Part shown: positions 2 through 57,069 of the stretch, piece by piece
Layout: every line of letters begins with the position of its first letter
Numbering within the stretch: the first letter of the stretch is position 1
Assembly (NCBI RefSeq): GCF_964204865.1
Contig: NC_135254.1
Span: 12,958,001-13,022,000, forward strand
DNA: 64,000 nt
DNA from: Styela clava
Lineage: Eukaryota
Reading direction: 5' to 3'
The notes under the pieces: generated by a model
The model's input: the letters and a program-made list of their open reading frames with translations, nothing else
The model's database searches: none
What the model was told of the DNA's origin: nothing
Made by a program: the position numbers and the translations under genes

Positions 2-988
2 GGATCCATTGTACGGCTGGCCGGAATTCGTGGTCTGGAGATGATAACACTAGAAATAGTTCAAAAGGATAAATCCATTTTAAACAAAGAAATCATTCGA
101 AAGTTGATGTGTTCTGTGCTACAACAATCAGGTGAAAAAATTCATAAAGTTCGTGATGGAGCCAGAGATGCTTTATTCTCACTTCTCCACAACAATCCTA
201 AAGTTCCGTTTATACCACATCATGATGAACTTGTACCCATATTCATCAACAGAGGTTACATGCCTCGTATGAAAGGCTTATACCGAATGACAAGCAAAGT
301 ATTGATGTTCGACACGTATCTGTATAACATGCTTCTCGGATTGGTAGTATCTGTTGGGGATCTCACCCAATCACTAGCTGATGCAAGCGGGGAAGCTCTT
401 TTCGCTCATTTGGATAGCATTCACAGAAATGAAGAGCAAATGGAAAAATTTATTGACGCATTTATAAAAATATTTGAAAATCATTTGAAAGTTACAAGAG
501 TGAGCATGCCTTTACTGAAAACGTTACAGCTTATTTTGCAGAGAGGATACTTTTCTGGTATCGCAGATGTCATGCAAGACCCTAAGAAGAAAGATTCACC
601 ACTTTCGCAAACACCCACCAAGATATTCTCACTAGTGAAGCAGGAGATTGCTAGGACAAAAGATGCCCAACGACTTTTAACAAGTATCGAAGTATTTTGT
701 GGATTTCTACAGTTACCATCTGATGATCTTCGAAAATGTACTATTTCGCAACTTCTACGAATGCTTTGTCATGTTTATCCGAAGGTCCGACGTTCAACTG
801 CAACTCAACTTTATGAATCTGTACTAACTTACGATGATTTGGTGTCTGACATGGACAACTTGGAAACAGTCATGACTATATTGAGTGAAACCGTTTGGGA
901 TAGTCCAGTTGATGCTCTACGTCCGATACGAAATGAACTCTGTCCATACTTTTCTGTAGCTGTTCCGAAACTAGTTTCAAAAAAATGA
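2..988 (+). CDS. TBCD: Tubulin-specific chaperone D, C-terminal part (5'-partial, uninterrupted to stop)
   Basis: Frame open from nt 2 (GSIVRLAGIRGLEM...) to TGA at 986-988. Motifs QQSGEKIHKVR, LLGLVVSVGDLTQSL, RVSMPLLKTL, LCHVYPKVRRSTATQLYE and ILSETVWD match the recalled TBCD C-terminus. Confidence 0.93.
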   Translation, partial: GSIVRLAGIRGLEMITLEIVQKDKSILNKEIIRKLMCSVLQQSGEKIHKVRDGARDALFSLLHNNPKVPFIPHHDELVPIFINRGYMPRMKGLYRMTSKVLMFDTYLYNMLLGLVVSVGDLTQSLADASGEALFAHLDSIHRNEEQMEKFIDAFIKIFENHLKVTRVSMPLLKTLQLILQRGYFSGIADVMQDPKKKDSPLSQTPTKIFSLVKQEIARTKDAQRLLTSIEVFCGFLQLPSDDLRKCTISQLLRMLCHVYPKVRRSTATQLYESVLTYDDLVSDMDNLETVMTILSETVWDSPVDALRPIRNELCPYFSVAVPKLVSKK

Positions 989-5512: not shown

Positions 5513-5605
5513 TCATTTCTTGTGTAAGGATCTTGCACTGACCATTCCTCCATCATCTGCTCTTCTCATGTTGCTTCCTGTCAGAGTTGCAGATTGCATA
5601 TGATG
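5513..5605 (-). CDS. CSNK1D/E: CK1 delta/epsilon coding exon 9 (terminal)
   Basis: tttgaacag|CAT; [30 protein letters not shown]; phase 0 fits exon 8. Confidence 0.7.
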   Translation of the reverse strand, partial: HHMQSATLTGSNMRRADDGGMVSARSLHKK

Positions 5606-8600
5606 CTGTTCAAATAGAATTTTGTACATAAAAATCTGGACTACTCAAAAACAAAATTTACCGTGAGATTCCTTCAAGTCATCAGTTGAGCAAATGACAT
5701 CATAATAAGGTTTGTGGGCAAGATTGTCAAGTTGTTTAAACAATAAACTTAACCCATGTTGGCATTGCAGATAAAATGGCCACCTCCTCACTCAGAGTGT
5801 AATAAATTGAGTATGAATGCTGAAGCGGAGAGATTCAGGTCTTTCTAACATCTGCCAGTGACACACCCCTGGTACAAAGCCTTGTTTAGGGGAAAAGGCA
5901 TAAAAAAAGATAACCAAGGGAATTCCTGAAAATTTTTCAAGATTCAGAAGCCTAACAAATATCCAAGAGTTCTCTCTCTACAGAGTTCCGTTATCAATTT
6001 GGCATGCATTGTCATACTTTTGAAAGAAGAAATGCCATTCATCAGTGGAAAATCTAACAATAAAATGTCAAAAGCTTATTCGAGATAAAATGAAAACCGA
6101 CCATTCTTCCTGGGTTAGGTTCAGGCGCCACATTGGCTGAAGCTCCACGATGTAATCTGTTACTGACATGTCTTTCTCTTTCGGCACGAGACATAGGCCT
6201 TGAAGAGGATGACGCTGAAATACATTACAAAATTTTTTAAAATTTTTAAAAAACCAATTTACATTTATCCAGCAAAATAGAATATGGAAATAATATAACT
6301 ACATAAATAAAGATTCTATGTCTATGTTCTGATATGATTGATAAAATGTAAAAGATTGCCTGCTTTTTTGAAGTTTTCTAGTCTGATCTGATTCTTCTGC
6401 AAATTTTTCTCAATTTTTCATCTTTTCTATACGTTATGCTGAACTAATGAGACTTCTTCAATCGCAAAACCGAAGAAACTCTTTTTTTCATTTCTTTTTT
6501 ATTTTATTAAAAATATTAACAGTTGCTTAAAAGCAAAAGGCTATTGCACTTAAATAATATAAATAAACTATAATATGTGTTACTATAAAATAAATGGAGA
6601 CTAACTAAGGAGATTTATTTCTCAAGTATTCCTTTATTTGATATTTGACAGGAAAAGTTTTTGCGGATGCGAAAGGCGTAGCAAAAGATCTACGATTTTT
6701 TCCAGGTGATCGCACTTGCGAAGTGTCCTTTTTAAACCATGGTGTTTGCTTCACTAAGTCGGTTGCATCAGCCCCACCTTGTGTCTCCAACGATTTTCGT
6801 TGTTTCAATGAAGTAGAAGAATCCATGCAATCTCCTACTTCGTTTTTCAATTTCATTCCATGGTGTAACTTAAAAAGTAACGAACGGATAACCATTTCTT
6901 TTTCTATCGGTGAAATTCCTCTCTTGTCTGTTAATCTTCCTCTAGATCCAAGTGAAATATGCTTACTTTTGTCTCCGCTTAATTTGCGACATGTATGATT
7001 ACTCGAGTAATTTTTTGAAGTTTCTGTGTAACTGATATCCTTTTTTGGGCTTGGTGATGTTGTAATATTATCGACTGCGTCTAATTTCGCAATTTTTTTC
7101 TTTTGTTTCAAACCTACAGGAAGCTTTGCTTTTGGCCATGCATCTGCGTAAAATATGTGGCCTTTACCCACAGACGTGCTTTCAGAAGGTATGCGAGGTA
7201 TACTGTGTTCTTTTTTTATTTCTTCTGCTTGTTTGGCATCTTGATTCTCTTTGACTTTCAGTCTCACGGAAGGTTGAATTTTTTTGGCTTTTACTTTGCA
7301 TTCTCTGCGTTCTTTCTTAGTCGAAGTGGATCGACTACTTTCCACTACTCTTTTCTTCTCTGCAACTTTTGGCTCCTCAAAAACAACTTTTTGCTGTTTT
7401 GCAACCTTTGGATTTCTACTGAGAAAAATTGGACGATTTTTTGAAATATTACCAGATTTTAAAAACCCCATATAAGCTTTCAACGAGTTTTCTGCTGGAC
7501 TACGTACTTTTGGGGACCTTCGCTCTGGGCTGATAGCTTTATACGACTCTTGACCTTTGGGGCTTGAAATTTTAAAAGAATCACGACCAGGGCTGGAAAC
7601 TTCACGAGTTTGAAGACCAACACCTTTTGAAGTTTTTTTTCTAGCGTTCCGAGCCATGTTTGAAAAATCCGCCACTCGTACAGTCGAGTACGGCATGTTG
7701 GAATCATCACAATTAGGAGAGACCGATTTCATCAAAACTCTTTTCCGCATAGTGATATCCTCTCTTGACGGACTTTTCCTCATTTTTGATTTGTTCGATT
7801 TACGAAACAACTTAGGTGCTGTTGGTACTTTAGGAAAATCTTCTAACGTTAAATCAATTTCATATCGAATGCTTTTAGGTCTTGCACGAATATGCCATCT
7901 ATTGGACAGAGGCGATTCCAAAACTTCAACATTTGCGTTTGGAGTGTGTGATCCAGCACTAGCCATATCTCCTTCACTTTTAGTAGGTACACAAGATCTT
8001 TTATTGGAATGTTTATTCTTCTTTCCACTCCCAACTGAAAATAAAGCAATTTAATGGTCAGTTTGAAAATTCTGAGAAAGAGACAAATATACCGATTCTA
8101 ACCTTTACTCCTTGGTTCAACTGATTTGCACCTCTGGCTTTTTGAAATCTCATCCTGTTTTTGACCTGATAATTTCTTAGTTGATATCTAAACATGGAAG
8201 AAGTTGTCAGTCATGTTCCTTGGATTGGAATTGAGGGAAGAAGCCTCTTATATCAATCAGCAATTAAAAATATTCCACTGCATAAAATTCCGACGTTAAT
8301 GTATTTTCACAGCTTGTTACAGATATAAATGATCAACATGAATCTATTATTCTATTTCTTTCTATATGCTCAATTTACACTATGTATGAGTGAACATCCT
8401 AACTCTAATGAGTAAACATCCTAATTTTTAAGAGTTACCTTACTTTACATTCAATTCTAAAATACATTCTCAACCACAAACAACACAGATGCCAAAAACT
8501 ATTAAAACACAATGATTCCTGACAACTAACTTTGCTTTTGAGGTTATTCTGATCCGTTTCCGATTTATACATTATATAATTGACGAGACCACCATGATGT

Positions 8601-11600
8601 ATGGCAAGCTTTTGTTGTAAGGCTTCATCGTTTTGAGAGAATAAATAGGCTGCTTTATTTTCCCAATTCTGCATATAACTTTTCCTGCTGTCTCCTTTCG
8701 AATACGACACATACTCCAATGATTTTTTCTGCGCTGCTTTCGTCAACGATGATTCAACATAAGGAATCGTGTCCATGCTTTGAATAGATGCACAATCGCT
8801 TACAAGCCAACCAAGAACTTTACTTTTTGATCGTAGCGTATGCTCTGCACTAATCTGTTTCATAACTGGATGAATTTCAACTTTTAATTCAAGATCTTTG
8901 TACATTTCTTTTGTGCTAAATAATTTATTTCTGCTTTGATCTTTTAGCATCAGTAGTTTTGACTTTCTACCTGAAGAAAAAAGTAATCTAATTGATTAAG
9001 TTTACTTATAACAGTTGTAATGTAAGAAGTTGTTGGAAAAATGGCTAATGGGCAAAAAAAATCTAATTTTTTTTCGTCTCACACTGGATTGAAATATCCA
9101 GGAATGCCATACCAAACAGTACAGCTAATAATAGAATTTATACTTCAAATGTGTTATATACTGGATTAACTTTTTACAGAATCAAGTGCAAAAACTTCAC
9201 ATTTATTCAAAATTCATATTGAAATTTTGATTTTAGTCGAAGATGATTTTGTAACAAATTCTGCTCATGTCTAATTTTTAACAATGATAGGAGCATAAAA
9301 AAAAAACATAGTTTGAAAAAATACCTTCAAGAAATAGAAATGTTTGAATGGTTTTTTTATTGTATATGAGAATTGTTTGATGTTAGCTAGTTTGTATTTT
9401 TTTTTCTATTCTTAAATTGAGGACAAAAATAATTCAGTTTTCCAAGAGAAGAAAAAACAGAATTTCAAGATTACCATCAAATAATTGGCATATAGAGACA
9501 ATCAAACAAAGGCTACCAAAGAAAAAAACTGTAATTGTATAAAAATCTATGTTATTAATGCTAATTAATGAAATGTCAATGAGCTGATCTAGACAAGTGA
9601 GATGTCATGTAGGTTCAACCATAAAACCTATATGATCCCATTATGATTGCCGGTGAATCAGGAAATCCCAGATCAATGTCAGAGACATCACAAGGTTAGG
9701 GCACTGCCTTGTTTTCATGGCACAAACTAAAATTTTCTGCTCTGCTATATAAATATGACATATTTCGTGAGTTATTGAGTTATTCTAAATCAAAAAAGGA
9801 GTATTTAAAGAGTTCTAACAGCCAATATTACTTTCTATATGCAAATTATAAATGAGATTATAAAACGAAATAATAATACAAAATGGATAAAAAGATTTTG
9901 ATTATTCGAAAAACTGTGCATCAAGCATCAAAACTGTGCGCCACTGATATAATACAGATAAAAAGGATCAAGTATGATCCAGACATCAAGTACACTGTTT
10001 AAAACACTGCGTGACCCGACACAGAAACCAAAACTGATCGACCGAAAGTTACTTCGTTGTATAGTGTGACGTCAATATGACAACATCCAATAGTCTAATT
10101 GTTTTTATGGTGGTATGACAACCAATCAGCAACTATACATAAATGTAAATTAGCTTGTTAATTGACATGACACATAGAAGTACATGCACCAAAGCTCACC
10201 TCCTAATGATTATTAACTGTGTGGTAACAGAAAACCACATTATGTAGGATTGAAACTGTTAACCAAGACTGACCAAATAGTTGGAATACAGTAGACCAAA
10301 ATCAAGATGAGCATCATATATTTATATATATATTACTAATTGAAGTATTATTTTTCAAGAATGGCTCCATTCAATAAAGAATATATTACATCATGTTATA
10401 AACTATAATCTTTCAAGTTGAAAACCTACTTTAATAACTGTGGCAACATGAGTACACAATCAACATTATACTAAGATAATATGAAAAAATTTCCCATACC
10501 TTAGATTGGACAAATTTTGACATAAAAATATATATTGCTATTGAAAGACCTCATCCACATACAGCTATTGCTCTCTAGAGACACTAATTTTGACAAAGGA
10601 TGAAATTGAAATGTGAGCAGACACAATGGACACAAGAAAGTAATGTATATAGTTTGCATCGATTCATAGTCATTCGCTACTGAGCTTGAAGTATTCTAAT
10701 TTTAGCTATTTAATAATGCTTCCTCACAAAAAAATCTAAATCTACCTCTGGCTTGAACCTAAACATTTCTGAAATCTAGAACACCTTTCTGTATCATATG
10801 AAATCAATACTCCCTGAGTTTCCTAATAAATCCCTAATTTTCTAAAAAAAAAAAAAATCAGAAATAATACTTTGTCCATGATGAGCAGCAGATCCCTGTA
10901 ACTGTCGACCTCCAGTTGTGTTTGTTCCACCAAGTGCTCTAGTTGTTGATGATCGAGTATGTTGCGTTCTGTCTTCTCTTTCCTTCCTCTCTTTGTCTGC
11001 ACTATCTGCATTGCTTCTATTACTCTATATTGATGGAATGTATAAATATCACCAATGATTAGACAGAGAACCAGAAGTTGAGGTAATACATAATTAGATG
11101 ATCATTGGAACATTATAAATGTATGGACCCTGATCAAGTAGTTCTCAGCCGAAGGTCCGTAGATGTAATGTAAACAAATGATTTACAACGAAACATTCAG
11201 TTTCTGGAAGAGGATATCGTAAATCACCCTTCGAATTCAAGGCGAGTTTCGAGGTGTGTTTGATGACAGGCGTCTGGTAGAGACAATGTGTGCATAACAG
11301 TATTGACTGGCTTCATTTTAAGGAGTCCTCAGTTTTCAGTCAAATTATTGAAAGGATTCATGGTATCAAAAAGGTTAGAGCAGTGGTTCCCAAACTTTTT
11401 AGAGTTGGGACCCACTATTTATTACCACAGCTTATGGCGACCCACTTAACTTTAATTCAATTTTTTTTTTTTTTATGACATAACACAGAACACAGCAATG
11501 GCTAATCATCGCAAAGCTACCGTGTTTCCTCGAAAAGAGGACTTCGCCTGAAAATAAGATGATAATTTGAATTTTCAAAATGATTTTAATTAAACCCTAC

Positions 11601-17600: not shown

Positions 17601-20600
17601 GTCGAGGCAGAGGTACAGATTTTAACTTACTCTTATATAACAAATTTACATAAAACAAGACATAACAAAAAAAATTTCAAAAATTATGCTAAATCAAAAT
17701 TATTCAATACTTATGCTTTTCAACAAAATTATTCGAATTAGCAGTCTATGTTTTAAACCTATTATAACATCCCAGCATAGTTATATTGACGTCACTGGCA
17801 ATCATAGGTCAGCCTTTAGTCATTTGTAAGTATAAACAAACTGATTTTATTGACAAGAACACCACAATTCATGACGTAAATCAGGCTATACAATGATGAT
17901 TTATATACAGTAGCACCATAATATAAAACATCTAAATGATTCAAACCAAACATAATTTATTCGGTCATCATGCAGATGTAGAAAATGGCGTATATGCCCA
18001 CATATGAAATCGCATGTAAATTTTTTAAAGAAAATGGGAAATGAGAAAACAACTACCAAGTAAGCAAACTCCAGTTAACAGGCAAATTCAAACAACAACC
18101 ATATTATTATTATTTTGAATGTTATAATCACCATGTTATTGTTATGAGGAAGATAGTCCTGATAACCAATTTTATTTCAATGAAAACACTGATAAGAACC
18201 CAGGAAATTATATTCCATATAATTATCACAACTAAAGCATACTTATTCTTACTTTTACAGTTTTAGTAGGCTTCAAAAAAATTCATTGAAAATGACACAC
18301 CTTAGTGTTTTCATATATTCTATGTCTAACACACTGTAGAAACCATTGTCAACATTGTTTTGTTTAGAATTCAGTCATAATAAAATACTGTCATAATGGT
18401 TGTCCTTGAATTACTGGTTTTAACCAAGACATTGTAAAGAAAACAGAAAGTCTCATATATGATTTGCATGCCTAATAATAAATAATAAAGAATTGTCTTC
18501 AGTACAATGTGGATTATCTTCCATAAGGATGAATAAAACATCATGATTTTCGATTCATTCTCTACATTATACCTCCTGGCCTTTGATTTAAAGATTTCAT
18601 GTTTAGAGTATTTGAATGTCAAAATGAAAACAAAATTCATGAAATTACAGAATACCACTAATGCTAAATGGAAGTGATTGTGGTTTCGAAAGCACTTGTT
18701 GGTGGCTTCATTAGATTTGATATCGCTGATAACATTTCCGGTGGTTCAAAAGCTAATTCTATGATGTTATCAACTAAATGCCTTTTATGATTTTCCATTT
18801 TACTCTGATTTGCAGTGCACAGTTAGGATACCGCATTTTACAGGCCATAAGACACTCTTCAAATACCCTTTTTCTCAAAAATTGTTCGCTAATGTATGGA
18901 TCATGAGGTGCTGTGCTTCATTGCCTACAATCAAAACCAGCAGTACCAGTATTTTTACTCTGGTTTGCATTGCACAGTTCGGATACCGCATTTTACAGGC
19001 CATAAGGCTTGCTTCAAATACCCTTCCTCCCAAAAATTGTTCGCTAATGTATGGATCATGAGGTGCTGTGCTTTATTGCCTACAATCAAAACCAGCAGTA
19101 CCAGTATTTTTACTCTGGTTTGCATTGCACAGTTCGGATACCGCATTTTACAGGCCATAAGGCTTGCTTCAAATACCCTTCCTCCCAAAAATTGTTCGCT
19201 AATGTATGGATCATGAGGTGCTGTGCTTTATTGCCTACAATCAAAACCAGCAGTACCAGTATTTTTACTCTGGTTTGCATTGCACAGTTAGGATACCGCA
19301 TTTTACAGTCCATAAGGCACTCTTCACATACGGTACCCTTTTTCTCAAAAATTGTTCGCTAATGTATGGACCATGAAGTGCCCTGTGCTTTATTGCCTGC
19401 ACTCAAAACCAGCAGTACCAGTACCGCCATATAGCCCTGTGTGCTTTATGTATGAATAAAAAACCCATCTGAGTAATTTATTGACATCGTTCTAATCGAA
19501 GTGCACACCGAATAATCGACTTACTTTGCACAAAAATGTTTTTTAGTTGGGATTGGCTTGTCTAAACAGTTTAGAATAAATATGTGATTGTTGTTAAAAT
19601 GAAAACACTACATCTACCAGGGTTTGTTATTATTCTAAATAGTGGACAGCGATGGAGACAAACAGACAGCATTTGGCTATTTAACATCATCAAACCATTT
19701 ACAAAAATTGCAGTTTCGAGCAACAGAAATTCTCATAAATATGATATCCAATTATGTAAAACATTGAACCTAAAGTCAATCACAGCCTGAAGCAATACAA
19801 ATGAGCTGTTGAAAGTAATCCTTGGTAGAGTTAATCAAATTACCAACATGTTATTAGGTTCCCGTTACAGAAGAATGAAAATGATAAAACCACAACCATT
19901 GACTGCCAATGTCTTTATAATCATGGTACCCCGATTTTTTCACCGAATATATTATGTATATCAGCATAATGCCCATCTGTATATGTGTTTATATTGAATT
20001 ACTGAAAAGTGAAATAAATTTCATGTTTTTAAACTAGACTACACTGGAATGGCACTTTAATTAGCCCTTTAGCAGAGTAATAAAACAAAATTCAGGGTTG
20101 TAAAATTTTACAGCCAGAGGCTATTGAGGTTGCAATGCAAGAATTAAATTCAAGAACACTTCTGATAAAAAGACATTCTATGAAAATAAATTTAAATATT
20201 CTATATTATTCCAAGTTATACAATTTCATCTTTTATCACAGCCTAATAAAATATATTCTTTTTTACTAATTTTATTCATCTAGTTAAATCTTGGGAGTAT
20301 TGCGTTTAAAATCTTATTCATATTCATGAATAATTGCCCCCTGAGTGCGGATAGACCAGCACCAGCGTTTCTGGCTAACGTACCCATAATAAAAACGCTA
20401 GAATTGTTTCAAAAATTGTCATCTAGTATGTCACCATAGACATTCCTTGTCATTATGTTGATTTTAAAAATATGCCGATATCTTTTGTTCTATTATAAGT
20501 GTTTGAAATAAATTATCTATCCTTTTATCATGTCATAGATAAACACTTGAGAAGTGTAAATATTAACAGATATGTCATAAGATTTTTAATTGATTGAAAC

Positions 20601-23600: not shown

Positions 23601-26600
23601 CAAGGTTATACAAGAGCAATTGTGATATTTAAAATTTAACAAAGAAAAGAGCAAATAACACAGAACTACTGTATATGCAATTCTAAGTAACCATATTCGT
23701 AAAAATATTTTTTAATCCAGAAATTACAAAATTAATTCAGATAGAATTGTATGCATCTAGTAATCAAACGTTTAAATGACCAAATAATGAAGGAAACATA
23801 ATAAAATCATGACTAACCAGTTGATCAGCTAGAAGTAAGACTGTTTTTAAACTGAATTTCCTTGAACAGAAATTGAATAAATCTTCAAGACTTGGTCCCA
23901 GTAATTCCATCACCAGTACGTTATAATCTCCTTCAGCACCGCACCACTTCACAGTGGGTATCCCAACTGTAAAATTTGAAAATATTACTGACCGTTATTG
24001 ACCAATAGTACCCAATTGAAAGCTTAGGCCTATTGTTGTGAGTAATTTTGAACAGAAAATTATTTGAGCCTGAACGCTTGACATTGGGAGACAGATTTCA
24101 GAAAGTTCTCCAAACATACAGTCGCCGTTGCTCCCGAAGTATGCGAACCAAGATGGCGGACATCGGAACGTAACATGGGTAACAGGTTATGGTTAGGCGA
24201 TCATTTTTTTTTTTCAATTTTCTTTATTTTAGTCCTATTATCAGTTCGAAGACTAGCCAAGAGCCTCCCGTAGTATTTATACCTAAAATTATGGCCTAAC
24301 CCTAACTTAGTACACATATTACATTCCGATGTCCGCCATCTTGGTTCGCATACTTCGGGAGCCCCCAGTCGCCATTGTAAAACACAAAAATTAATAGGCC
24401 TAGTAGGATAGTTGATTCCATTAATGAAAAACACAAACACAACACACAGAAATCAGCTATGTACATGATGTTTTGAAAAATAATTGAATAATTTTTTTGA
24501 AAATAAATTGAAAAAGTCTGGAGAATACTAATGGTTTGGTGTCATGATCCCTAAAGAGAGAAGTTTCAGTTCAATGTGAAAGCACTTGATCACATATCTG
24601 CTTTGGAATCGAAGGTAAAAATTCAAATTTCTCAATTTTTCGTAATGTGATTGGAATGACTTCCACTATAGTCAAGTAAAAATACATTCTGAAAAGCATT
24701 GCAATTTTGTTGTTTTCAAAGCTAGTAGTACATTACAAAAGATAGGTTGCAATTGGGTAGATAAGATCACCCGACCTCAAAAATCAATTGATAACAGTGA
24801 TAACAAAACCATCAACAGCATGTTGTTAACATCTGTCATTCTTTCACACAGCCCAAATGGCTTGCGATTTATTGGAACAAAACAAATCTTTGTTTTCGTC
24901 AATTGTTTATTTATATGGAATTTAAAAATTCAACAAATCAGTTTTAAAAAGCAAATTATCGATTTCATGTTCAATTAAGAGTGGAAATCTGTTATGAAAC
25001 ATTTTAGTGATAAATGTGAGAAACAACATGTTTTATTCTGGGTTATATGCTGCGCCTCCTTATCTGAATTACAAAATATTGCCACATTTTAGTTAGTTTA
25101 GTACTATTAATTTAAATTTGATAAAAAAAAAAAATTCAGACTAATAGGCAGCATTAGCAAATGGTTTGATTCATTCATTCAAATTTTCTGGTTGAACTTA
25201 GAGGGGGCAATGGGTGAAAAAAGTGTTGAGACCCATTGACCCAAATGTAATTTATTTTTCTCTTCCAACAAAAGTGGGTTCAAATTGTGGTAAAAATGAA
25301 TCGATCGAGGACAATGTGATTCTTAATTCTGTGAATAAAAATTTCCTGTTTACTTTAACCCTAAATTGATTCTAATCCATAAAGGCTTATGTTTAAAATC
25401 CTCAAAACAATTCCACAAGGGAATACAATGAACCCAAATTGTACACAATGTCTCGTATGACAATATGACAGCAGGATTAGTGGGGTCATCAGGTTTGTGC
25501 TGTGTCATTTGCTTTCGTCTTATGAATTGTTAACAACCTAATCCTTTTCTACTTTCTACGTGACTTCAAGTCAAATATAGAGGCATTGTTTAAAACTGAT
25601 ACATTTTGGGATATTATAAATTACAATTTACACAGTCCAATACAAATGGCTATTCATTGCAACACGGCATCAAAGACAGGACATAGCATAATAAAATCTA
25701 AATGAGTAGCCTACTTTAAAAATAACTTTGAATGGTTGAAACTTGAAAGATTAGGTTATTTCTGCACACAAGTATCCGTATAAATTGTAAATTGAAAAAC
25801 TAAACTACCGTAGGTATGACTAACTAGAAGGACGATAAATCATAAATTATCCCCTTATTGAAGATGTAAATAGACCACCAATCAGAATGAAATTGTTTCG
25901 CAACTTTTTACCTCAAAGTCACAACTCTGTGTTAGTTTCTCCTCTACTACATAAAAGCGAATTTCAAAATATGTTATTTAAAAATATGGAATTCTTACGC
26001 TTGGCAATTCTTGACTTTGATATTGAATAGTATGAATAACATTTATTTTGCCAAATAACAAAGCCAATTGAATTATTCACAGGTATATGACAATTGACAA
26101 CATTAATCAAAGTTGAAACATTGTACGTGAACAATGCACACTTCTCATATTATCAATAAACAAACTTGACAATACCAGATAAGGTCATCCCAAACAATGA
26201 TAAAGACTTACTCAAGGGAAATCACTCGTTTCAATTTATTATTAGGAAACACATTAGACACAGGAAGTACTCGACTGCTTTAACCAACTGAAAATCTACT
26301 CTATTTATGTTCAGTGAGCCATATGTCTGTCTCCGATAAAATTTTCTGTTTAAGTGTGTAACAAACATGGCATCTACTTGGTAGAAATAATTTCATATCC
26401 GACTGGGTCAAAAGTTATTTTGGGGGTATAGAAAGCCCTTTTATTACCCCTCTGTTAGACAAACTATTAAAATATTATTTCGAAACCAAGCAAACCCAAC
26501 ATAAATACAATACAACAATTTTGATTTCATAATCAAATTCATACATGCTTTGCCGCATGCTACCAAACTTATCTCAGATTTGTAACTTTTTTAACACATT

Positions 26601-31281: not shown

Positions 31282-57069
<25,788 letters not shown>

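What the first reader, a model, noticed from the sequence alone, without database searches (positions are those of the whole stretch)
6605..11024. Hidden three-exon cassette giving CK1 delta/epsilon a swappable ~650-aa basic tail
Seen: CK1 intron 7 holds three same-strand exons (8970-8531, 8187-8103, 8034-6605) with pyrimidine-AG acceptors and GT donors. Their phases (1-0, 0-1, 1-stop) chain exactly from exon 7, which ends in phase 1. The cassette has its own AATAAA about 100 nt past the stop. The spliced product is 2994 nt (997 aa) versus 414 aa for the canonical form. Known: the CK1 delta/epsilon tail is autoinhibitory, and small alternative-splicing changes in it tune activity in mammals. 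I know of no isoform swapping in a tail this large. Inference: an alternative-last-exon switch yielding a giant, differently targeted kinase. About 2 kb of open frame in AT-rich DNA is unlikely by chance.
Basis: partly seen in the sequence, partly recalled or inferred. Interest (0 to 1): 0.9.

Follow-up and report, generated by a model that had tools for sequence, protein, structure and literature searches.

The report
Conserved orphan gene inside CK1 intron
Three real coding exons for a basic, disordered 650-residue protein sit inside intron 7 of a casein kinase 1 delta/epsilon gene and could join the kinase in frame, but they are more likely a separate gene nested in the intron, and the RNA test that would decide could not be run.

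Summary
Exons at 8970-8531, 8187-8103 and 8034-6605 (minus strand) lie in intron 7 of a CK1 delta/epsilon gene. They have AG acceptors and GT donors, and their phases chain from exon 7. An AATAAA lies 97 nt past the stop. The lengths are as stated: canonical 414 aa, fusion 2994 nt and 997 aa.

The exons are coding. The 481-codon frame exceeds every shuffle, and exons A and B have exon-like codon usage only in the proposed frame. The cassette is single copy and has no Pfam, PDB or transposon relatives. Exon C has three homologues (E 1e-23 to 1e-26), each an ORF of 415-468 aa. Two start with Met at the position where exon C begins.

The strong acceptor at 8970 lies 20 nt before the first ATG (8950), which fits an independent nested gene of 644 aa.

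My odds are about 55% for a nested independent gene and about 25% for a functional 997-aa CK1 fusion. The same scan refuted a similar in-frame joining idea for the ADAR intron of this genome.

The parts
10871..11024 (-). CK1 delta/epsilon coding exon 7, the first tail exon. It ends one base into a codon. Its donor is AAA|gtatta.
   Evidence: the reading frame gives [15 protein letters not shown]...AAHHGQ
10030..10081 (-). Candidate internal promoter in intron 7, inferred only. It has a CRE palindrome TGACGTCA (10074-10067), a TATA-like CTATACAA (10064-10057) and an Inr-like TCAGTT (10037-10032), within a local CpG cluster.
   Evidence: there are only two CRE palindromes in the 64-kb window; not tested
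8531..8970 (-). Cassette exon A, 440 nt. Its acceptor is ttttttcttcag|G and the first ATG is at 8950-8948. Its donor is AAA|gttagt.
   Evidence: acceptors of this strength occur 0.28 times per kb; codon score +0.26 against an intron maximum of -0.09
8103..8187 (-). Cassette exon B, 85 nt, phase 0 to 1. It has no in-frame ATG.
   Evidence: codon score +0.22, reached by 0.75% of intron windows; it is the only in-frame path I found from A to C
6605..8034 (-). Cassette exon C, 475 codons plus the stop. This is the conserved core of the protein: basic (pI 10.3), 16 Ser/Thr-Pro sites, mostly disordered.
6503..6508 (-). AATAAA poly(A) signal of the cassette, followed by a U/GU-rich stretch. It lies about 290 nt upstream of the CK1 exon 8 acceptor.
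6102..6214 (-). Canonical CK1 exon 8, the conserved tail ([24 protein letters not shown]...).
   Evidence: it aligns to human CK1 delta residues 355-389
5513..5605 (-). Canonical CK1 exon 9, coding part: 30 codons plus the stop.

Best explanation
The cassette is a separate protein-coding gene nested on the same strand in intron 7 of the CK1 delta/epsilon gene.

Its mRNA starts at or just upstream of the acceptor at 8970. The most likely route is transcription from a promoter inside the intron, followed by spliced-leader trans-splicing onto 8970, or splicing from a short non-coding 5' exon. Translation starts at ATG 8950 and runs through exons A, B and C to give a 644-aa protein. The mRNA ends at the AATAAA at 6508.

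The protein is basic, largely disordered and rich in Ser/Thr-Pro sites. It carries a few short conserved motifs: [19 protein letters not shown], EKExxIRSLLFK and FATPFxSAK. It is probably a nuclear or cytoskeleton-bound phosphoprotein of a family restricted to this lineage.

CK1 transcripts normally splice exon 7 to exon 8 across it. Any exon 7 to exon A chimeras would be minor by-products.

Shown: the exons, their coding character, single-copy status, homologues, phases and the poly(A) signal. Inferred: the transcript start, trans-splicing, independence from CK1 and the function.
For: - The ORF is complete within the intron. ATG 8950 is the first ATG after the acceptor, 20 nt downstream, and the frame stays open to the stop at 6605.
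- The cassette has its own AATAAA.
- Exon C has no ATG near its start, yet its first 22 residues align with the homologues (KKNK, KSEG). Upstream coding exons are therefore needed, and exon A supplies the start.
- The homologues P0002 (437 aa) and P0003 (468 aa) begin with Met within 0-3 residues of the exon C start. None of the three homologues reaches CK1-fusion length.
- The CK1 gene's own first coding exon has the same layout, with an acceptor-like cccag 8 nt before the ATG.
- In Ciona about half or more of genes are trans-spliced at the first functional acceptor (PMC11155486; PMC1488885).
- CRE, TATA-like and Inr-like elements lie 1.1 kb upstream, inside the intron.
Against: - No RNA evidence was obtained.
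- The 8970 acceptor has a better pyrimidine tract (10 of 11) than those of CK1 exons 7, 8 and 9 (6-7 of 11), and it lies downstream of the exon 7 donor. The literature read here says that an acceptor paired with an upstream donor is preferentially cis-spliced. CK1 transcripts should therefore use it at some rate.
- The phase matches exon 7, and no stop lies between the acceptor and the ATG.
- ATG 8950 has C at -3, a poor context.
- I could not learn whether the homologues come from transcript or genomic contigs, so their Met starts are weak evidence.
- The promoter elements are consensus matches only.
- I did not verify the taxon. The spliced-leader-like array I found lacks a GT directly after the 16-mer.
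Confidence: 0.55

Rival explanations
1. Exon 7 of CK1 is alternatively spliced to exon A, and the transcript ends at the cassette's own poly(A) site. The product is a functional 997-aa kinase whose conserved autoinhibitory tail (exons 8-9) is replaced by the basic disordered protein. This form may exist alone or beside an independent cassette mRNA, as a gene capture in progress.
For: - The phases chain exactly, and no stop lies between the acceptor and the first ATG.
- A very strong acceptor is the first one met after the exon 7 donor.
- The cassette has its own poly(A) signal upstream of exon 8.
- Paired acceptors are preferentially cis-spliced (PMC1488885).
- The stop lies in the last exon, so the chimera would escape nonsense-mediated decay (inference).
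Against: - Phase agreement has a one-in-three chance.
- An ATG lies 20 nt into exon A.
- The homologues are ORFs of 415-468 aa with Met starts.
- The canonical tail exons are conserved with human CK1 delta, so they must be used widely. That requires the stronger 8970 acceptor to be skipped most of the time.
- A comparable in-frame proposal in this genome failed its RNA test.
- The Botryllus fuhc locus was first described as one alternatively spliced gene. It proved to be two genes with rare chimeric transcripts (PMC3691228).
Confidence: 0.25
2. Only exon C is the gene. A single-exon (or 5'-UTR-spliced) mRNA is translated from ATG 7966 into a 453-aa protein, the size of the homologues. Under this model exons A and B are untranslated or belong to something else.
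For: - The homologues are 415-468 aa and cover only exon C.
- Exon A has no detectable homologue.
Against: - The 22 residues before Met 7966 align with the homologues.
- Exons A and B show exon-like codon usage in exactly the chaining frame, and the score drops to intron level past the exon A donor.
- If exon A is in the mRNA, its ATG 8950 comes first and is in frame.
Confidence: 0.08
3. The cassette is a chance open frame, a decayed pseudogene or a transposon relic, and it has no product.
For: No relative in Pfam, the PDB or the Atlas.
Against: - The 481-codon frame is never reached in shuffles.
- The three homologues have conserved motifs.
- The cassette is single copy in the 377-Mb genome.
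Confidence: 0.02

Closest known systems
Mammalian CK1 delta1/delta2 (and epsilon) C-terminal splice isoforms
   Same: The host gene and the region are the same: the regulatory tail after the kinase domain.
   Different: The mammalian isoforms differ by about 16 residues at the extreme C-terminus. Here about 68 conserved tail residues would be replaced by 651 residues of an unrelated protein that has standalone-sized homologues. No junction has been shown here.
Same-strand nested genes, such as the vesicular acetylcholine transporter gene inside the first intron of the choline acetyltransferase gene
   Same: A complete gene lies on the same strand inside a host intron, with scope for shared 5' exons through alternative splicing (my own knowledge).
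   Different: At the cholinergic locus the shared exon is non-coding and the two proteins stay separate. Here the possible joint is coding to coding and in frame.
Botryllus schlosseri fuhc locus (PMC3691228)
   Same: It is an ascidian locus first read as one alternatively spliced gene. It proved to be two genes with rare spliced chimeras, attributed to read-through.
   Different: The fuhc genes are tandem and 227 bp apart, not nested in an intron.
Spliced-leader trans-spliced ascidian genes and operons (PMC1488885, PMC11155486)
   Same: A strong 3' splice site lies shortly before the start codon, and the mRNA 5' end is made by trans-splicing at the first functional acceptor.
   Different: Trans-splicing at 8970 has not been shown. 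An acceptor inside a host intron also has an upstream donor, unlike a classical outron.
ORF nested in the ADAR intron of this same genome (earlier finding s1-817516)
   Different: That case was settled by RNA as an independent gene. This one has not been tested.

Membership tests
Alternative-last-exon isoform of CK1 delta/epsilon | Spliced RNA that joins a kinase exon (10871) to the alternative exon (8970) | not testable with these tools
Alternative-last-exon isoform of CK1 delta/epsilon | Reading frame continuous from the upstream exon to a stop in the alternative terminal exon | tested here: met
   the phases are 1-0, 0-1 and 1-stop, giving 2994 nt and 997 aa
Alternative-last-exon isoform of CK1 delta/epsilon | Own poly(A) signal inside the intron, upstream of the canonical next exon | tested here: met
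   AATAAA at 6508-6503; the exon 8 acceptor is at 6215
Independent nested (intronic) gene | Complete ORF with its own start and stop inside the host intron | tested here: met
   ATG 8950 to the stop at 6605 through exons A, B and C, 644 codons
Independent nested (intronic) gene | Own transcription start or trans-splice site, independent of the host promoter | not testable with these tools
   Only consensus matches were found: CRE, TATA-like and Inr-like elements at 10074-10032
Independent nested (intronic) gene | Homologues exist as standalone proteins elsewhere | tested here: inconclusive
   P0001, P0002 and P0003 are ORFs of 415-468 aa with Met starts on Logan contigs of 3.0-4.3 kb.
Transposon-encoded protein | Multiple copies in the genome, or a transposase, reverse transcriptase or integrase domain | tested here: not met
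   One match each for exon C, exon A and the upstream intron in the 377-Mb assembly. No Pfam domain.
CK1 delta/epsilon (host gene) | Kinase exons and tail exon match CK1 delta/epsilon better than the alpha or gamma isoforms | tested here: met
   Exon 4 against CK1 delta/epsilon gives E 6.5e-48, against 1e-38 for alpha and 1e-29 for gamma. Exon 8 aligns to the CK1 delta tail, residues 355-389.

The most novel reading that the evidence does not exclude
A formerly standalone gene for a basic disordered phosphoprotein has been captured inside the CK1 delta/epsilon gene. The host pre-mRNA is then processed in two exclusive ways.

- Exon 7 to exon 8 gives the classical autoinhibited 414-aa kinase.
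- Exon 7 to exon A, with intronic polyadenylation, gives a 997-aa kinase that lacks the autoinhibitory tail and is tethered to a new targeting module.

A variant I rate at about 0.15: the nested mRNA is cut out of the host pre-mRNA itself by spliced-leader trans-splicing at 8970. That would be an operon-like gene inside an intron.
Probability: 0.25. Interest if true: 0.75.

Novelty: new member of a known kind. Interest (0 to 1): 0.4.

Why it matters
If the cassette is a nested gene, this is an unannotated, lineage-restricted protein family with only three detectable relatives among about 15 billion predicted proteins. It sits inside an essential and highly conserved kinase gene. It is also a clean case for asking how a host transcript skips three strong acceptors and a poly(A) site.

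If the in-frame joint is used, it would be the largest known tail swap in a CK1 delta/epsilon kinase, a family whose tail controls activity and clock timing. It would also show gene fusion through intronic capture in progress. A single RNA-seq junction count decides between the two.

Tried and rejected
I did not resend or trim the stretch, so read laying was never used.

**Searches that found nothing**
- Pfam on each exon and on all homologues.
- A PDB profile search.
- The ESM Atlas for exon C (best score 0.78, not usable) and for exon A.
- The search for homologous proteins with exon A and with exon C. The profile search added only P0003.
- A metagenome contig scan with the family profile.

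**Structure models**
- Exon A as a single sequence gave pLDDT 37.
- Exon C with four sequences gave pLDDT 40.
- Both were too poor for a fold search, so none was run.

**Spliced-leader RNA gene**
- The Ciona leader has only two exact matches, and neither is followed by GT.
- An array of about 85 copies carries a 15-of-16 variant next to a tRNA. The 16-mer is followed by TT, so I do not claim it as the spliced-leader gene.

**Readings rejected**
- A transposon origin, because the cassette is single copy.
- A direct A-to-C splice, because it runs into a stop.
- The acceptor-like site at 8071, which gives a stop or a 31-nt intron.

- The exons were searched one by one, by reference.
Full report
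**What is there**

The window is G000:C5:12958001-13022000 of a 377-Mb assembly. On the minus strand it carries a CK1 delta/epsilon gene with nine coding exons:

| Exon | Coordinates |
|---|---|
| E1 | 27602-27527 |
| E2 | 26892-26782 |
| E3 | 23966-23818 |
| E4 | 21409-21181 |
| E5 | 14931-14761 |
| E6 | 14013-13865 |
| E7 | 11024-10871 |
| E8 | 6214-6102 |
| E9 | 5605-5513 |

Exon 4 matches CK1 delta/epsilon at E 6.5e-48, better than the alpha or gamma isoforms. Exon 8 aligns to residues 355-389 of human CK1 delta, the regulatory tail.

- A, 8970-8531
- B, 8187-8103
- C, 8034-6605

Exon 7 ends one base into a codon. A+GT gives Ser and the frame then runs through A, B and C to TAG at 6607-6605. 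That adds 651 residues, for 2994 nt and 997 aa in all. AATAAA lies 97 nt after the stop, followed by a U/GU-rich stretch, about 290 nt before the exon 8 acceptor.

**Is it more than chance?**

- In 200 block shuffles of the window the longest open frame averaged 130 codons and never exceeded 201. Exon C's frame has 481 codons.
- Exon A's 186-codon frame alone would not be decisive, since frames of 146 codons or more arise 0.235 times per shuffled window.
- A codon-usage log-odds score settles it. I trained it on exon C, the CK1 exons and other long exons of the window, against intron sequence.
  - Exon A scores +0.26 bits per codon in the proposed frame. None of 2000 intron windows reached that (their maximum was -0.09).
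  - The other two frames of exon A are negative.
  - The part of the open frame beyond the proposed donor at 8531 drops to -0.39, like intron.
  - Exon B scores +0.22, reached by 0.75% of intron windows.
- The donors of A and B (gttagt, gttaga) match the local donor type seen in CK1 exons 3 and 5.
- A direct A-to-C splice runs into a stop, so exon B is needed.

**What the protein is**

- Pfam finds nothing in any exon or homologue. The PDB profile search and the ESM Atlas give nothing usable.
- An exhaustive phmmer search of 1.84 billion cluster representatives with exon C found two relatives. P0001 is 415 aa (E 1.4e-26) and P0002 is 437 aa (E 2.8e-23). A profile search added P0003, 468 aa. 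All three come from Logan contigs of 3.0-4.3 kb and carry no names.
- The alignment shows short invariant motifs in an otherwise fast-evolving sequence: LKSVSPNC..LPYS.VRVA.F, R.PK, EC.V..KKIEPS.R, YADAWPK, EK...(I/V)RS(I/L)LFK.H and FATPF.SAK.
- Exon C is basic (pI 10.3, 22% Lys+Arg). It has 16 Ser/Thr-Pro sites, five of them in a 38-residue insert that the homologues lack.
- It is predicted to be disordered apart from helices at residues 179-192 and 375-390, in a low-confidence model.
No specific function can be assigned.

**Fused to CK1, or a gene of its own?**

What follows is therefore indirect.

For a fusion:
- The phase fits, although that has a one-in-three chance.
- No stop lies in the 20 nt between the acceptor and the first ATG.
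- The 8970 acceptor belongs to a class found only 0.28 times per kb. It has a better pyrimidine tract than the acceptors of CK1 exons 7-9.
- It is the first acceptor after the exon 7 donor.
- The ascidian literature states that acceptors paired with an upstream donor are preferentially cis-spliced (PMC1488885).

For an independent gene:
- The first ATG after the acceptor (8950) is in frame and opens a complete 644-aa ORF.
- Exon C has no ATG near its start, but its first 22 residues align with the homologues. The start must therefore lie upstream, and exon A supplies it.
- P0002 and P0003 begin with Met within three residues of the exon C boundary. None of the three homologues reaches fusion length. 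This is weak evidence, because I cannot tell whether those contigs are genomic or transcript.
- An earlier follow-up on this genome calls it a sea squirt. It found a similar intron ORF in ADAR that is transcribed on its own.
- In Ciona half or more of genes receive a spliced leader at the first functional acceptor (PMC11155486). A strong acceptor a few bases before an ATG is the expected start of such an mRNA.
- The CK1 gene's own first coding exon has the same layout, with cccag 8 nt before the ATG.
- A CRE palindrome (one of two in the window), a TATA-like box and an Inr-like TCAGTT at the right spacing lie 1.1 kb upstream, inside the intron. These are consensus matches only.
- The Botryllus fuhc locus is a precedent. 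It was read as one alternatively spliced gene and proved to be two genes with rare chimeras (PMC3691228).

**Weighing**

- About 55%: an independent nested gene, with chimeras absent or incidental.
- About 25%: a functional 997-aa isoform, alone or beside the independent mRNA.
- About 8%: only exon C is translated, from ATG 7966.
- About 2%: no product.
- The rest is unassigned.

Because the 8970 acceptor is strong and in phase, I put close to even odds on at least some 10871>8970 reads existing. Their share is what matters.

**Limits**

- I did not verify the taxon. The Ciona leader sequence is confirmed in the literature, but it has only two exact matches in this genome, neither followed by GT.
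- An array of about 85 copies on contig C3 carries a 15-of-16 variant about 45 nt upstream of a tRNA gene. It is followed by TT, so it is not shown to be the spliced-leader RNA gene.
- The exons were searched separately, by reference.

**Verdict**

The giant-kinase reading is possible but is not the favoured one. A junction count on RNA reads would settle it.

Noticed in passing
window 2-985 (+), 34932-35582 (-), with CK1 at 5513-27602 (-): The neighbours are the C-terminal part of a tubulin folding cofactor D gene, converging on the CK1 3' end (Pfam TFCD_C, E 9e-40), and a gene with a BAHCC1/TNRC18-like Tudor domain upstream. From memory, BAHCC1, CSNK1D and TBCD all lie on human 17q25.3. If so, this looks like conserved chordate microsynteny and supports delta orthology.
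   Followed up: partly
window 5606-5619 (-), just before CK1 exon 9: The intron ends attctatttgaacag. Its first 12 bases equal the first 12 of the 16-nt Ciona spliced leader ATTCTATTTGAATAAG (leader sequence confirmed in PMC1488885 and PMC7986045). This may be coincidence or a trace of leader-related sequence at an acceptor. It is unexplained.
   Followed up: no
G000:C3:24847565-24961794 (loci L010, L011): A tandem array of about 85 units, spaced 0.5-1.8 kb. Each unit carries ATTCTATTTGCATAAG, a 15-of-16 match to the Ciona spliced leader. The 16-mer forms the 5' arm of a 9-bp hairpin and lies about 45 nt upstream of a tRNA gene (Rfam tRNA, 58.9 bits). It is followed by TT, not GT, so the link to a spliced-leader RNA gene is unclear.
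   Followed up: partly
window 18798-19423: A 155-bp tandem repeat of 4.0 copies with 93% matches, inside CK1 intron 4. It produces repeated spurious open frames on both strands.
   Followed up: no
window 24204-24452 (-) and 34605-34928 (-): Two copies of a dispersed element whose translation shares ...RWRT..(R/C)(R/N)MCT(R/K)[13 protein letters not shown].... One copy is in a CK1 intron and the other in the upstream gene. It is probably a short interspersed repeat.
   Followed up: no
window 10030-10081 (-): A CRE palindrome TGACGTCA, a TATA-like box 28 nt before an Inr-like TCAGTT, and a local CpG cluster lie inside CK1 intron 7. A GTTAGA donor-like site lies at 9819 downstream. This is a candidate promoter and 5' exon for the nested gene.
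   Followed up: partly
window 8388-8435: A 22-bp unit repeated 2.2 times in the intron between cassette exons A and B.
   Followed up: no
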